A stretch of 64,000 bases of DNA from the IMG/VR virus record IMGVR_UViG_3300036715_004471, positions 186,001 through 250,000 of that record. One strand, given 5' to 3'. The notes beneath the pieces are model-generated. The model was not told where the DNA came from. It ran no database searches and saw only the letters and a list, made by a program, of their open reading frames with translations. Positions 48,130 to 50,084 of this stretch are shown here, in pieces. The translations under genes were made by a program, and so were the position numbers. Every line of letters begins with the position of its first letter. The first letter of the stretch is position 1.

Positions 48130-48164
48130 GCAAAAAGCCACAGTCAAAGACTGTGGCTTTTTGC
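48130..48164 (-). terminator. Intrinsic terminator after the major capsid gene (potentially bidirectional)
   Basis: Perfect 16-bp inverted repeat GCAAAAAGCCACAGTC-AAA-GACTGTGGCTTTTTGC. Confidence 0.85.
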
Positions 48165-48203: not shown

Positions 48204-49217
48204 TTAGGCACCGATTACGACAGACTTACGACCAGCAGCAACACCGCGAGGGTTGACGATGGCGATACCAATTTCTTCGCTTACTACCCAACCAAGCTTC
48301 AATTGCTTTGGCTCGTCGGCTGGAAGAACTTCGATATCTTGTCTAATTGGCATAACACCAACGAACTCAGGATCGGCAGCTCCGTAGATGGTTCCTGGTG
48401 GAACAATCTTGCTTACCATGATGTCAGTACCCCAGATGTGAGCATAAAGACCGGTTTGTAGAACTTCTCTCATTGTGACAGGATCGAAATCACCACCACC
48501 AACGCCTTGTCCACCACCGCTACCCCACTTTAGAATATCAGTGAATTCATTGATATTCATGAAGTACTTAGTTATAACCAAGTCCCAACGATCGATTTGT
48601 TGCTTGATTTCAACAAGGTCTCTCTTCAAAAGACCGGCATCAGCGATGTCAGTTAGGGTGTTTTCAACAGAAGCTGCGGCATCAAGTGCTGCGAAAATGT
48701 TGGCATCTTCTTGAGCCATGATTTCTTGACGAGCCTTCTGTACAGATCTGTCAATTACATTGAATCTACGACGTCTAACTTCGTTAATTCTGACAGTTGG
48801 GTTTGCGTAGATTTCGAAGGTAGGTACTACTACTCTATCACCGAATACTCTGGATTCTGGACCAGTACCGTTAGAGGAAATAACAACGGCTGAAACATCG
48901 ATATCTCTATCATATGTTGGTTGAGCACCTTGAGGTAGAGGATCTACAACTAAGGCTCTACGTGCGATACCATGGTAATCCAAGTTTCTACGAATTGGGT
49001 TTGCCATAGCTTGAGCTAGAGCAATTTTACCGTCTTGAGTCATAATAGCACGAGAGATCAACTCGTCGCGTCTGTCATCACTCAAGGCTACTTGACCGGC
49101 TAATCCCATATTAGCTGGTTGATTCTCTTCCAAAATTGCTGCATACTTAACTAATTGCTGCAACATATCCTTCAAAGAGGATGCGTTCATTGCGCCTTGG
49201 TTGTTGAACATATTCAT
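48204..49217 (-). CDS. Major capsid protein (HK97-like fold)
   Basis: IALAQAMANPIRRNLDY...VVVPTFEIYANPTV...QKARQEIMAQEDANIFAAL...GWVVSEEIGIAIVNP; strong RBS AGGAG; follows a cement gene and is followed by a terminator. Confidence 0.85.
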   Translation of the reverse strand: MNMFNNQGAMNASSLKDMLQQLVKYAAILEENQPANMGLAGQVALSDDRRDELISRAIMTQDGKIALAQAMANPIRRNLDYHGIARRALVVDPLPQGAQPTYDRDIDVSAVVISSNGTGPESRVFGDRVVVPTFEIYANPTVRINEVRRRRFNVIDRSVQKARQEIMAQEDANIFAALDAAASVENTLTDIADAGLLKRDLVEIKQQIDRWDLVITKYFMNINEFTDILKWGSGGGQGVGGGDFDPVTMREVLQTGLYAHIWGTDIMVSKIVPPGTIYGAADPEFVGVMPIRQDIEVLPADEPKQLKLGWVVSEEIGIAIVNPRGVAAGRKSVVIGA

Positions 49218-49244
49218 ATAAAGTTTCTCCTAAATGGAATTTTT

Positions 49245-49328
49245 GCCAGTTTTACCAGCGAAACATATTCTAAAAGATGAGGGGTCTCCCCGAAGAGAGT
49301 TAAAAATCCCAGCCCCTCGACTGGGATT
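49245..49328 (-). promoter_or_regulatory. Structured RNA leader of the capsid gene (three hairpins, possible pseudoknot)
   Basis: AATCCCAG/CTGGGATT stem with GAGGGG in its loop, CTCTC-TTCG-GGGAG hairpin, downstream CCCCTC, and GCTGGT-AAA-ACTGGC. Confidence 0.5.
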
Positions 49329-49335
49329 AAATCAA

Positions 49336-50007
49336 TTAAGCTGATGGTGGATTGAAGTAGAAAGTTGCGAAAGCAAAAGTGTTATTCAATGCAGTAACTA
49401 GAGAGTTTGGAGTAGTGACAAGAGAACCATTGGTCTCAAAGTCAATGAAACGTCCAACAACTACGCTGTTACCTGCGGCAGCAGTGCTTCCAACTGGAGT
49501 CAATTGACCACCAGAAGCGCTAGCTGGTACCCAAGTCAATGCAGCGCCAGTATCTAGAGTGGTATTAGTTGGTTGTAGACCGTCCACAGAAGCAGTGTCA
49601 CATGCATCCAAAGATACGGCGTAAATACCTGGCTTCTCCCACAAAGTAACTTTACCAGAACCCAAAGCAGTGTGAGGTCCTAGAACCACACCACCAGTAA
49701 TTTGTTGACCAACAGTACCACCAACAACTGAACCAAACAAGGTTCCATATCCAGAAATACCATCATCACACAACATAAGTGGTCTCTTGGTAGTAGCAAC
49801 GTTTCTGGTTACAGCAACCCTCTTGACAACTGAAGAAGGATCTACATATCCATCAAATACATCATGAGATGCTTTGTCGGTTGCAGAAGTTGCAACAACT
49901 GAAGTGAAGGTAACGATTTCTCCACCCTTCAAAGTCAAAAATTCTGTATCAAGACCATCGTATTGACCCAAAGGTTGTACGCCTGGTTGTAATAGTTTTA
50001 ATGCCAT
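49336..50007 (-). CDS. Capsid decoration/cement protein
   Basis: Directly precedes the MCP; about 220 aa, beta-rich, with GSGKVTLW and VVGRF motifs typical of cement proteins. Confidence 0.65.
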   Translation of the reverse strand: MALKLLQPGVQPLGQYDGLDTEFLTLKGGEIVTFTSVVATSATDKASHDVFDGYVDPSSVVKRVAVTRNVATTKRPLMLCDDGISGYGTLFGSVVGGTVGQQITGGVVLGPHTALGSGKVTLWEKPGIYAVSLDACDTASVDGLQPTNTTLDTGAALTWVPASASGGQLTPVGSTAAAGNSVVVGRFIDFETNGSLVTTPNSLVTALNNTFAFATFYFNPPSA

Positions 50008-50084
50008 TTGTTTTTCCTATAATCTTTAATGCCGTATAAATACAATCGGCACGATAACTTACACCTAAACTTACTAAATCACTA

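What the first reader, a model, noticed from the sequence alone, without database searches (positions are those of the whole stretch)
49245..49328. Pseudoknot-capable, switch-like RNA between the cement and major capsid genes
On the mRNA: 8-bp stem AAUCCCAG/CUGGGAUU followed by a U-run (terminator-like) with GAGGGG in its loop; then a C(UUCG)G hairpin; then CCCCUC, fully complementary to the loop (6-bp pseudoknot). GGGG-AGA-CCCC is a mutually exclusive alternative. A terminator-like hairpin just before the most abundant protein is unexpected, and this GC-rich design stands out in AT-rich DNA. It may be an mRNA stabiliser, processing site or autoregulatory operator. It does not match the pistol ribozyme layout.
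Basis: partly seen in the sequence, partly recalled or inferred. Interest (0 to 1): 0.6.

Follow-up and report, generated by a model that had tools for sequence, protein, structure and literature searches.

The report
Conserved pseudoknot before a giant-phage capsid gene
The GC-rich element between the cement and major capsid genes of this 446-kb phage is a real RNA pseudoknot, kept by compensating mutations in about 30 related phages, but it is not a conserved terminator or switch and its job, probably as a structural barrier on the capsid mRNA, is still inferred.

Summary
As a pattern in one genome it is no more than chance (5 such GC-rich hairpin/complement patterns genome-wide against 4 in shuffles). 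Comparison settles it. In 30 distinct homologous leaders from related huge phages the loop/downstream pairing is kept in 99.4% of cases, and 5 of its 6 pairs show changes on both sides. P1 and the inner hairpins covary too, and frequent G-U pairs fix the strand.

The element is an H-type pseudoknot. The window and its nearest relative carry one embedded hairpin; the others carry two. It occurs once per genome, always between the cement-fold gene and the major capsid gene. No Rfam 15 family matches it.

- **Terminator reading:** fails. The U-run exists only in the window, and a metatranscriptome read crosses it.
- **Switch reading:** the alternative GGGG-AGA-CCCC hairpin is possible only in the window and its nearest relative.
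- **SD pairing:** no conserved pairing with the Shine-Dalgarno sequence.

Close relatives carry a different stable hairpin, or a terminator plus promoter, at the same site, in a patchy cassette-like way. Best guess (about 0.4): a self-folding barrier or insulator on the cement-capsid mRNA that affects processing or stability. A gene-32-like protein operator is the main rival.

The parts
49336..50007 (-). Upstream gene, 223 aa, with the fold of a capsid cement or stabilising protein. Its stop codon UAA is at 49338-49336.
   Evidence: ORF. It is syntenic upstream of the MCP in 76 of 80 related loci. The AF2 model has pLDDT 77. VIA-align gives Z 8.4-9.8 to cement or stabilising chains of phage capsids (Pam3 8hdt_G, TW1 5wk1_K, XM1, T1, BB1), with unrelated (non-phage) entries at Z 2.9 or below. 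Atlas neighbours carry PF22758 Phage_cement. There is no direct Pfam or PHROG hit.
49321..49328 (-). P1 5' arm, AAUCCCAG
   Evidence: Read. The P1 helix is 94.4% paired, and all 6 aligned pairs show changes on both sides.
49319..49320 (-). L1, UC (CC in most relatives), the 2-nt loop that crosses the pseudoknot helix
   Evidence: Alignments A2 and A3. The second position is C in at least 90% of sequences.
49313..49318 (-). Pseudoknot 5' strand, GAGGGG, in the P1 loop
   Evidence: It pairs with 49284-49279. Covariation: AU17/GC11/GU2, AU12/GC12/UA5/UG1 and GC24/AU5/GU1.
49305..49312 (-). P1 3' arm, CUGGGAUU
49300..49304 (-). U-rich linker UUUAA. In the window it replaces hairpin P2 of most relatives. 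The AA is conserved.
   Evidence: Alignments A2 and A3. The U-run is present only in the window. The AA before P3 is nearly invariant.
49286..49299 (-). P3 hairpin, CUCUC(UUCG)GGGAG, embedded in loop 3 of the pseudoknot
   Evidence: It aligns with P3 of the two-hairpin relatives. The three outer pairs are essentially always paired, with UA17/GC9 and CG18/UA11.
49279..49284 (-). Pseudoknot 3' strand, CCCCUC
   Evidence: It ends 62 nt before the A of the MCP AUG.
49270..49276 (-). Conserved CUUUUA(G/A) box 2-5 nt after the pseudoknot
   Evidence: Two U columns are invariant in A2. The box is absent in L006, where class-B hairpins follow the pseudoknot. No conserved pairing partner was found.
49245..49259 (-). 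Second conserved hairpin, GCUGGU-AAA-ACUGGC, shared by the class A, B and C leaders and many unclassified ones (more distant class-D leaders carry a longer variant)
   Evidence: A5, 49 distinct leaders: 97.3% paired, 3 of 6 pairs with changes on both sides, slid controls 3-50%.
49227..49244 (-). Conserved A/U-rich stretch AAAAAUUCC, then the Shine-Dalgarno AGGAG (49231-49227)
48204..49217 (-). Major capsid protein gene, 337 aa
   Evidence: phrog_2522 major head protein, E 1.1e-77. About 70% nt identity to part of the Bacillus phage G major head gene.
48132..48157 (-). Canonical intrinsic terminator 47 nt after the MCP stop: a 9-bp GC-rich stem, loop UUU, then U5
   Evidence: Read directly. It shows what a real terminator looks like in this genome.

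Best explanation
**Shown.** The element is an autonomously folding H-type RNA pseudoknot on the sense strand of a late capsid mRNA. Stem P1 (6-8 bp) carries a G-rich loop. After a 2-nt crossing loop, that loop pairs over 6 bp with a C-rich strand 30-70 nt downstream. The connecting loop holds one hairpin (P3; window and L001) or two (P2 and P3; all others), preceded by conserved adenines. The element is single-copy and sits only between the cement-fold gene and the major capsid gene.

**Inferred.** It has no promoter of its own. It is transcribed through together with the cement gene, and the transcript ends at the canonical terminator after the capsid gene. The pseudoknot acts through its stability rather than through a specific ligand. 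It would be a compact barrier or insulator in the long untranslated spacer that does one or more of the following:
- blocks exonucleases after a cut in a neighbouring A/U-rich single strand;
- shields the spacer from endonucleases or Rho;
- keeps the capsid-gene ribosome-binding region folding independently of the upstream cistron.

On this reading it is neither a conserved intrinsic terminator nor a two-state switch.
For: **Structure**
- MAFFT alignment of 24 distinct elements: the pseudoknot helix is 99.3% paired. The whole structure is 90.3% paired against 77.4% in shuffles (0 of 500 reach it), and slid controls give 41-57%.
- 30 distinct elements: 99.4% paired, with 5 of 6 pseudoknot pairs and 19 of 21 pairs overall changed on both sides.
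- G-U pairs are frequent (for example UG in 23 of 30 at one P1 pair), so only the mRNA strand can fold this way.

**Specificity**
- One hit in the 446-kb genome (57.8 bits, E 8e-17; the next best has E 0.2).
- In about 240 fetched loci every strong hit lies just upstream of this capsid gene.

**Co-transcription**
- A metatranscriptome record with 2 mismatches spans 49257-49404.
- That library covers only the capsid gene and the cement 3' part of the 4 kb laid.
- A canonical terminator follows the capsid gene.

**Function through stability**
- Few conserved unpaired bases: the L1 C, the AA before P3, and the U-box.
- P2 varies from absent to about 14 bp.
- Relatives carry other stable structures at the same site: a long hairpin (class B), a GC hairpin with a UUUCG loop (class D), or a terminator plus promoter-like box (class C).
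- These classes are exchanged among close relatives. Class A needs at least 9 changes on the tree of the cement protein.
- L006 carries the pseudoknot followed by the class-B hairpins.
Against: - No transcript ends have been mapped. The RNA evidence is a handful of 151-nt contigs from relatives in one metatranscriptome, and DNA carry-over is not excluded.
- Which side would be protected is unknown. A cement protein should be needed in amounts similar to the capsid protein, which weakens the case for differential stability.
- The host, and therefore its RNases, is unknown.
- The conserved CUUUUAA box after the pseudoknot is not explained by a pure barrier model.
- Patchy distribution could also mean the element is dispensable.
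- The nested alternative fold is about as stable as the pseudoknot in the window.
Confidence: 0.4

Rival explanations
1. Protein-binding translational operator of the T4 gene 32 type. A phage protein would nucleate on the pseudoknot and spread over, or act on, the A/U-rich leader down to the ribosome-binding site, tuning capsid protein synthesis. The binder might be an unassembled capsid, cement or scaffold component, or a dedicated regulator.
For: - The layout resembles the gene 32 operator, a pseudoknot about 67 nt upstream of the start codon followed by an A+U-rich stretch with UUAA(A) repeats (PMC3014915).
- Here the pseudoknot ends 62 nt before the AUG.
- It is followed by one or two YUUUUAA(G) boxes and an A/U-rich stretch.
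- It is single-copy and gene-specific.
- Two G-C pairs of the pseudoknot and the L1 C hardly vary.
Against: - A conserved hairpin interrupts the 'unstructured' region.
- No candidate binding protein is known.
- Close relatives do without the pseudoknot, or swap it for unrelated hairpins or a promoter. That is odd for a dedicated operator.
- The universally conserved GCUGG hairpin is a better operator candidate.
Confidence: 0.2
2. Pseudoknot-type terminator or attenuator at the end of the cement transcript. The last-formed GC-rich helix plus the CUUUU box would release RNA polymerase, and a short promoter in the next 30 nt would restart transcription for the capsid gene.
For: - The pseudoknot occupies the place that canonical terminators hold in class-C relatives, which are followed there by a GGTAATAAT promoter-like box.
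- A U-rich box lies so that its last U is about 8 nt from the helix end.
- In the window, P1 alone is followed by U5.
Against: - The first 2-5 nt after the helix are mostly C-rich (ACCC, GCUC), which stabilises the hybrid.
- Real terminators in these phages have 5-8 U directly after the stem.
- The U-run after P1 is not conserved, and the scan did not flag the site.
- An RNA-library record reads through to 49257.
- L006 lacks the U box.
- The candidate promoter word GTAAGT is not enriched upstream of genes in this genome: 12 observed against 7.9 expected.
Confidence: 0.12
3. A processing signal or catalytic RNA. Either it is a new self-cleaving ribozyme, or it is a tRNA-like pseudoknotted acceptor-stem mimic recognised by RNase P or RNase Z. 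In both cases it would cut the capsid mRNA free of the cement cistron.
For: - P3 abuts the pseudoknot 3' strand as a T arm abuts an acceptor strand.
- Many members continue with purine-CC(C) and then U-rich sequence.
- Small ribozymes are common in phage genomes (own knowledge).
- It is compact, pseudoknotted and about 60-85 nt long.
Against: - No Rfam ribozyme or tRNA model matches, and ARAGORN finds nothing.
- The P3 loops have no T-loop consensus, and P2 is dispensable.
- Very few conserved unpaired nucleotides for a catalytic core.
- An RNA record spans the whole element uncut.
Confidence: 0.08
4. A riboswitch. The pseudoknot would be a small aptamer, like preQ1-II, SAM-II or fluoride, that senses a metabolite or ion and gates capsid expression.
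For: - An H-type pseudoknot with an embedded hairpin is the preQ1-II topology (own knowledge).
- In the window the fold competes with an almost iso-energetic nested fold.
Against: - No Rfam hit.
- The SD lies about 50 nt away and is not part of the pseudoknot.
- No conserved expression platform or alternative pairing.
- Hardly any conserved unpaired bases.
- The competing hairpin exists only in two sequences.
Confidence: 0.06
5. A largely dispensable passenger. It would be a stable fold that rides in a recombination hot spot between two conserved capsid genes, with little effect on expression.
For: - The leader classes are patchy on the tree.
- The same spacer holds 0.8-1.3 kb insertions in several relatives; the one insert with a family match (L059) encodes a GIY-YIG endonuclease, while the L017 insert ORF matched no family.
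- Phage G has only 25 nt in this spacer.
Against: Purifying selection on pairing is evident. Four helices are kept through many independent double substitutions across lineages whose cement protein is only 52-84% identical. Neutral DNA in an AT-rich phage would not keep them.
Confidence: 0.08

Closest known systems
T4/T2 gene 32 mRNA leader pseudoknot (autoregulatory translational operator)
   Same: A phage mRNA leader with an H-type pseudoknot of two coaxial helices placed 60-70 nt upstream of the start codon. It is followed by A/U-rich sequence with UUAA-like repeats (PMC3014915; here).
   Different: The gene 32 knot is minimal, with no embedded hairpins, and it regulates an ssDNA-binding protein that binds it. 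Here the knot is intercistronic, carries one or two inserted hairpins, precedes a capsid gene, is followed by a conserved hairpin, and has no known binding protein.
preQ1-II riboswitch (H-type pseudoknot with a hairpin embedded in loop 3)
   Same: The same topology: a hairpin loop pairs downstream, with an extra hairpin just before the 3' strand (own knowledge).
   Different: No Rfam match. The 3' strand is not the Shine-Dalgarno sequence. There is no conserved ligand-pocket sequence, and the setting is a phage capsid gene.
Intercistronic and 5'-terminal mRNA stabilisers (T7 RNase III hairpins and the gene 10 5' stem-loop, REP and puf hairpins, Bacillus 5' stabilisers, viral exonuclease-resistant RNAs)
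   Same: Stable structures inside or at the ends of polycistronic mRNAs that act by blocking nucleases. They tolerate replacement by other stable folds, as seen here with classes B and D. This comparison rests on own knowledge of those systems.
   Different: Those in bacteria and phages are simple hairpins. A covarying pseudoknot with embedded hairpins in this role has not, to my knowledge, been described in a DNA phage. Function is not shown here.
Rho-independent terminator
   Same: In the window, P1 is a GC-rich hairpin followed by U5.
   Different: The U-run is not conserved, and the hairpin loop is engaged in a conserved pseudoknot. The RNA reads through. True terminators of these phages look different.
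Pistol self-cleaving ribozyme
   Same: A P1 hairpin whose 6-nt loop forms a pseudoknot, and frequent occurrence in phage contexts.
   Different: In pistol the pseudoknot 3' strand lies between the P2 5' strand and P3, inside an open P2 helix. Here two closed hairpins lie between P1 and the 3' strand. There is no conserved core and no Rfam hit.
Candidate structured RNAs of IMG/VR (PMC10690425, 2023)
   Same: That survey predicted 10,006 motifs from the same kind of data, including five upstream of a major capsid family.
   Different: Its supplementary tables are not held, so I cannot say whether this motif is among them. No function is assigned there either.

Membership tests
H-type RNA pseudoknot (structural class) | Hairpin-loop nucleotides pair with a single strand outside the hairpin, and the pairing is supported by covariation | tested here: met
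   99.4% of cells are paired in 30 distinct sequences. 5 of 6 pairs have changes on both sides. Slid controls for the whole structure are 42-57% paired.
H-type RNA pseudoknot (structural class) | Sterically feasible loops: a short L1 across the deep groove, and a long L3 across the shallow groove | tested here: met
   L1 is 2 nt over a 6-bp helix. No nucleotide lies between the 5' strand of the knot and the P1 3' arm. L3 is 20-60 nt with its hairpins. This is a reading of the sequence, not a 3D model.
Rho-independent terminator | A GC-rich hairpin directly followed by a U-tract, conserved among homologues | tested here: not met
   Only the window has the U-run. L001, L004, L009, L010 and the others do not. 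The terminator scan did not list the site.
Rho-independent terminator | Transcripts end at the U-tract | tested here: inconclusive
   One near-identical 151-nt record of an RNA library spans 49257-49404. These are contigs only, there are few of them, and DNA is not excluded.
Pistol ribozyme (Rfam) | Match to the covariance model, and the order P1, P2 5' strand, pseudoknot 3' strand, P3, G-U cleavage site, P2 3' strand | tested here: not met
   No hit at E up to 10 on the local stretch of the window, or up to 1 on nine relatives' loci. The order of helices differs.
preQ1-II and other pseudoknot riboswitches (Rfam) | Match to a covariance model, with the Shine-Dalgarno sequence inside the pseudoknot 3' strand | tested here: not met
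   No Rfam match. The SD at 49231-49227 lies 48 nt downstream of the 3' strand.
Gene 32-type autoregulatory operator | A pseudoknot about 60-70 nt upstream of the start codon, followed by A/U-rich sequence that reaches the ribosome-binding site | tested here: inconclusive
   The distance is 62 nt, and U/A-rich boxes are present. A conserved hairpin interrupts the region.
Gene 32-type autoregulatory operator | Specific binding by the regulated, or another, phage protein | not testable with these tools
   No RNA-protein tool is on hand, and there is no candidate protein.
Recoding signal (frameshift or readthrough pseudoknot) | A slippery site or leaky stop 5-9 nt upstream, and an extended reading frame | tested here: not met
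   The spacer from the stop codon to P1 varies from about 7 to 26 nt. The next in-frame stop comes after 0-3 codons in most, and there is no slippery heptamer.
tRNA-like structure / tmRNA | Recognised tRNA or tmRNA geometry, with a T-loop consensus | tested here: not met
   ARAGORN finds none in eight loci. The P3 loops vary (UUCG, GCAA, CCUUAAAA and others).
Phage capsid cement / stabilising protein (upstream gene) | Shared fold with solved cement proteins, and a position next to the major capsid gene | tested here: met
   Z 8.4-9.8 over 122-136 residues to Pam3, TW1, XM1, T1, BB1 and other capsid chains; three further phage entries at Z 6.8-7.0; the first non-phage entry at Z 2.9. Phage G has a 'capsid decoration' gene in the same place. 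Sequence models do not hit.

The most novel reading that the evidence does not exclude
The pseudoknot is the core of a new functional RNA class that punctuates the late capsid mRNA of huge phages. It would be either a self-cleaving RNA or an RNase P/Z-recognised, tRNA-like pseudoknot that releases the capsid mRNA, or a sensor for a phage protein or small molecule that times capsid synthesis. The class-B and class-D hairpins would be alternative solutions to the same task.
Probability: 0.12. Interest if true: 0.8.

Novelty: new variant of a known kind. Interest (0 to 1): 0.5.

Why it matters
Structured RNAs in DNA-phage late mRNAs are little studied. According to a 2010 review, the gene 32 pseudoknot was still the only viral pseudoknot known to autoregulate translation (PMC3014915).

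This finding offers three things:
- a well-supported, gene-specific pseudoknot in front of the most abundant virion protein of uncultivated 350-480 kb phages;
- a natural set of swapped alternatives at the same site (hairpins, or terminator plus promoter), which amounts to a ready-made comparison for asking how these phages set capsid-gene expression;
- a covariance model that marks the capsid locus of this clade in metagenomes.

If the function proves to be only structural, it is a tidy but modest addition to the catalogue of phage RNA motifs.

Tried and rejected
- **Rfam 15.** No family matched on the whole window at gathering thresholds, on the local stretch at E up to 10, or on nine relatives' loci at E up to 1. 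The only local row was an unrelated sRNA at 19.5 bits against a cut-off of 50.
- **ARAGORN.** No tRNA or tmRNA.
- **Terminator.** Rejected as a conserved feature.
- **Two-state switch through GGGG-AGA-CCCC.** This hairpin is possible only in the window and L001.
- **Anti-SD role for CUUUU, or for the pseudoknot 3' strand.** RNAalifold finds no such helix. Per-sequence folds of the region after the knot pair the SD inconsistently.
- **Pairing of the CUUUUAA box with sequence upstream of P1.** Seen in two or three members only (reading).
- **Frameshift or readthrough.** Rejected.
- **Repeated genomic element.** It is single-copy.
- **Promoter between the knot and the next hairpin.**
  - GTAAGT is not enriched upstream of genes.
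  - The GGTAATAAT box of class-C relatives is absent from the class-A leaders.
  - Its genome-wide copies give no clear picture.
- **SD/anti-SD mimicry by the knot.** Holds in some members (GGGAGG/CCUCC) but not in others (GAGUGG, GGGGGA).
- **Sequence homology of the upstream protein to phage G gp26.** None by BLASTP. The fold comparison was needed.
- **Earlier catalogue.** I could not check whether the motif is already listed in PMC10690425, because its supplements are not held.
- **Host.** Not identified. Related capsid genes lie on contigs binned with Bacteroidia, Chitinophagales and Candidatus Berkiella genomes, which I do not take as evidence of host.

Full report
**Setting**

The window is part of a 446,541-bp virus record with about 39% G+C. 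The genes around the finding lie on the minus strand. The ORF at 48204-49217 is the major capsid protein (MCP): phrog_2522, E 1.1e-77, with about 70% nt identity to part of the Bacillus phage G major head gene.

The ORF just upstream, 49336-50007, has no Pfam or PHROG hit. Its AlphaFold model (pLDDT 77) aligns to solved capsid cement or stabilising proteins (Pam3, TW1, XM1, T1, BB1, HFTV1 and others) at Z 8.4-9.8. Three further phage entries follow at Z 6.8-7.0, and the first non-phage entry has Z 2.9. Atlas neighbours carry Phage_cement. Phage G has a 'capsid decoration' gene in the same place.

A textbook intrinsic terminator follows the MCP gene at 48157-48132.

**The observation**

On the mRNA strand the 118-nt spacer reads as follows:
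- UAA stop at 49338-49336;
- P1, AAUCCCAG/CUGGGAUU, at 49328-49321 and 49312-49305;
- a loop of UC plus GAGGGG (49318-49313);
- linker UUUAA;
- hairpin CUCUC(UUCG)GGGAG at 49299-49286, then A;
- CCCCUC at 49284-49279;
- AUCUUUUAG;
- a second hairpin, GCUGGU-AAA-ACUGGC, at 49259-49245;
- AAAAAUUCC, then AGGAG at 49231-49227, then AUG at 49217.

Taken alone it is not remarkable:
- The spacer's MFE has z -1.87.
- The pattern '8-bp hairpin plus GC-rich 6-mer complement 10-70 nt downstream' occurs 5 times in this genome, against 4 in each of three shuffles.
- The nested fold (-21.9 kcal/mol) is about as good as the knotted one (-16.3 for its nested part, plus a -10.3 duplex, less a pseudoknot penalty).

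**Comparative evidence**

The MCP has 320 relatives in IMG/VR and 388 in metagenome contigs. Many lie on contigs of 200-500 kb. I extracted the leaders. They fall into four main classes (10 of the 84 distinct spacers fit none of them).

- **Class A** (the window and about 30 distinct sequences) has the pseudoknot.
- **Class B** has a long hairpin with a conserved GAUUGA-like loop, then CUAUC and a short hairpin.
- **Class C** has a canonical terminator, a GGTAATAAT promoter-like box and a short hairpin.
- **Class D** (MCP 78-83% identical) has a GC-rich hairpin with a UUUCG loop.

The GCUGG hairpin before the Shine-Dalgarno sequence is shared by classes A, B and C and by many unclassified leaders; class D carries a longer variant.

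In a plain MAFFT alignment of 24 class-A elements, the loop/downstream helix is paired in 99.3% of cells and 4 of 6 pairs are changed on both sides. The whole four-helix structure is 90.3% paired, against 77.4% in shuffles (0 of 500 reach it) and 41-57% when partners are slid.

With 30 distinct elements aligned to a model that did not include the knot:
- The knot is 99.4% paired.
- 5 of its 6 pairs covary, for example AU17/GC11/GU2 and AU12/GC12/UA5/UG1. Variants include GAGUGG/CCACUC, GGGAGG/CCUCCC, GGAAGG/CCUUCC and AGGGGA/UCCCCU.
- All six P1 pairs covary.

Abundant G-U pairs show that the fold belongs to the mRNA strand.

Most members have two hairpins in the connecting loop: P2, which is variable and 4 to about 14 bp long, and P3. 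The window and L001 have lost P2 and carry a U-rich linker instead.

**What it is not**

- *A conserved terminator.* The U-run is absent from every relative, including the closest. The scan did not flag the site. A 151-nt record of a freshwater-sediment metatranscriptome, with 2 mismatches, runs from the cement ORF across P1, the U-run and the knot to 49257. That library covers only the MCP and the 3' part of the cement gene within the 4 kb laid. The RNA evidence is thin (contigs only, DNA not excluded), but it points to read-through.
- *A switch, as far as comparison can tell.* GGGG-AGA-CCCC can form only in the window and L001. RNAalifold finds no conserved helix involving the SD. Per-sequence folds give no consistent SD sequestration by the CUUUU box.
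- *A recoding signal.* The spacer from the stop codon to P1 varies from about 7 to 26 nt, further stops follow at once, and there is no slippery site.
- *A member of any Rfam 15 family*, or a tRNA or tmRNA.
- *A dispersed repeat.* The covariance model finds one copy in the 446-kb genome (57.8 bits; the next best has E 0.2). In all fetched loci the strong hits lie only upstream of this MCP.

**What it probably does**

Three observations guide the inference.

First, almost all conservation can be accounted for by folding. The conserved features are the helices, a 2-nt L1, and adenines before P3 that could dock in the P1 minor groove. P2 is dispensable. This fits an element that works through its shape and stability more than through a ligand pocket or a catalytic core.

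Second, the site always carries some very stable, GC-rich structure in an AT-rich genome, but of different kinds (classes A, B, D) or a terminator plus promoter (class C). L006 has the knot followed by the class-B hairpins.

Third, the classes are scattered on the tree of the cement protein. Class A needs at least 9 changes, and sister pairs differ in class. The same spacer holds 0.8-1.3 kb insertions in several relatives; the L059 insert encodes a GIY-YIG endonuclease, while the L017 insert ORF matched no family. The modules therefore behave as interchangeable cassettes between two conserved genes.

From this I infer that the knot is a cis-acting structural module of a cement-MCP co-transcript. 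It would act as a barrier or insulator that shapes processing, decay or Rho/RNase access in the long untranslated spacer, and so sets or protects the MCP message. I put this at about 0.4.

The rivals are these:
- A gene 32-like protein operator, about 0.2. The layout is alike: the knot is 62 nt from the AUG here against 67 nt there, and is followed by U/A-rich boxes (PMC3014915).
- A pseudoknot-type terminator followed by a short promoter, about 0.12. The knot sits where class-C terminators sit. Against it, the first bases after the helix are C-rich, RNA reads through, and GTAAGT is not enriched upstream of genes.
- A processing signal or ribozyme, about 0.08.
- A riboswitch, about 0.06.
- A near-neutral passenger, about 0.08. 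The sustained covariation argues against this one.

**Novelty**

The fold class and the general idea of a structured leader on a phage mRNA are known. This motif, its gene specificity and its cassette-like alternation with other leaders are not in Rfam. It may or may not be among the 10,006 unnamed candidates of PMC10690425, whose tables I could not read. I rate it a new variant of a known kind, of moderate interest.

Noticed in passing
window 49245-49259 (-), plus 49236-49244: The hairpin GCUGGU-AAA-ACUGGC, followed by AAAUAAUUC-like sequence about 15-35 nt before the SD, is shared by the class A, B and C leaders and many unclassified ones; more distant class-D leaders carry a longer variant. 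In 49 distinct leaders it is 97.3% paired, and 3 of 6 pairs changed on both sides (for example GCUGAC/GUUGGC and GCCGAUAU/AUAUCGGC). It is a better candidate than the pseudoknot for a universal operator or 5' stabiliser of the capsid mRNA.
   Followed up: partly
window 49331-49345 (-); the same place in relatives: A small hairpin encloses the stop codon of the cement gene (AUCA-GCUUAAU-UGAU in the window). A hairpin around the stop is the MFE in 67 of 84 distinct leaders, formed by different sequences, with mean z about -1.1. It is often followed by (C)UGAAUAA.
   Followed up: partly
L007, L008, L016, L022, L026, L032, L034, L038 and others: the spacer upstream of the MCP: Class-B leaders form a second conserved motif at the same site. 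It is a 10-13-bp hairpin with a conserved apical GAUUGA/GAUUAA loop, then CUAUC, then a short GC hairpin. L006 (and L094) carry the pseudoknot followed by this motif.
   Followed up: no
L150, L151, L155, L159, L160, L165: the spacer upstream of the MCP: More distant relatives (MCP 78-83% identical) have a GC-rich hairpin capped by a UUUCG loop, and a longer version of the GCUG...CAGC hairpin. I call these class D.
   Followed up: no
L011, L017, L023, L029, L059-L061, L075: between the cement and MCP genes: 0.8-1.3 kb insertions sit in the same spacer. In L059 the insert encodes a GIY-YIG endonuclease on the opposite strand (E 1.7e-11). The spacer looks like a homing or recombination hot spot, which may explain the patchy leader classes.
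   Followed up: partly
Class-C loci (for example L035, L047, L065, L067, L163), about 40-50 nt before the GCUGG hairpin: A conserved box (T)GGTAATAAT, followed by GTTATTYAATTA, lies after a canonical terminator. It is probably a dedicated capsid-gene promoter in those phages. In the window's genome some copies lie in intergenic regions, but no clear picture emerged.
   Followed up: partly
window 49252-49266 (-): A tiny ORF, AUG UUU CGC UGG UAA, overlaps the conserved hairpin. It is present only in the window and L001, so it is probably fortuitous.
   Followed up: no
window 48132-48157 (-): A canonical intrinsic terminator (9-bp stem, loop UUU, then U5) lies 47 nt after the MCP stop and marks the end of the capsid transcript.
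   Followed up: no
window 50029-50052 (-), within the 148-nt spacer upstream of the cement gene: A hairpin GUGCCG...CGGCAU lies just before the cement-gene ribosome-binding site. It is preceded by two GTAAGTT words. This may be the start region of the cement-MCP transcript.
   Followed up: no
class-A leaders, between the pseudoknot and the GCUGG hairpin: Two direct copies of a YUUUUAAG-like box occur, one right after the knot and one abutting the hairpin, often with GUAAGU between them. They recall the UUAA(A) repeats of the T4 gene 32 operator. They are unexplained.
   Followed up: no
whole genome G000 (for example C1:95890-96483, 272823-273434, 415127-415528, upstream regions): The words GATATAT (23 upstream regions against 3.9 expected) and TCCCATC (22 against 3.9) are the most enriched 7-mers upstream of ORFs. 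They may be promoter or regulatory motifs of this phage. Neither occurs at the capsid leader.
   Followed up: no
L087, L088, L089 (genome contigs): Related capsid genes lie on contigs of 27-383 kb binned into MAGs named Bacteroidia, Chitinophagales and Candidatus Berkiella. These are probably phage contigs swept into bins. The host stays unknown. About 30% of crude ORF starts in this genome have an SD-like word, against 8% at random.
   Followed up: partly
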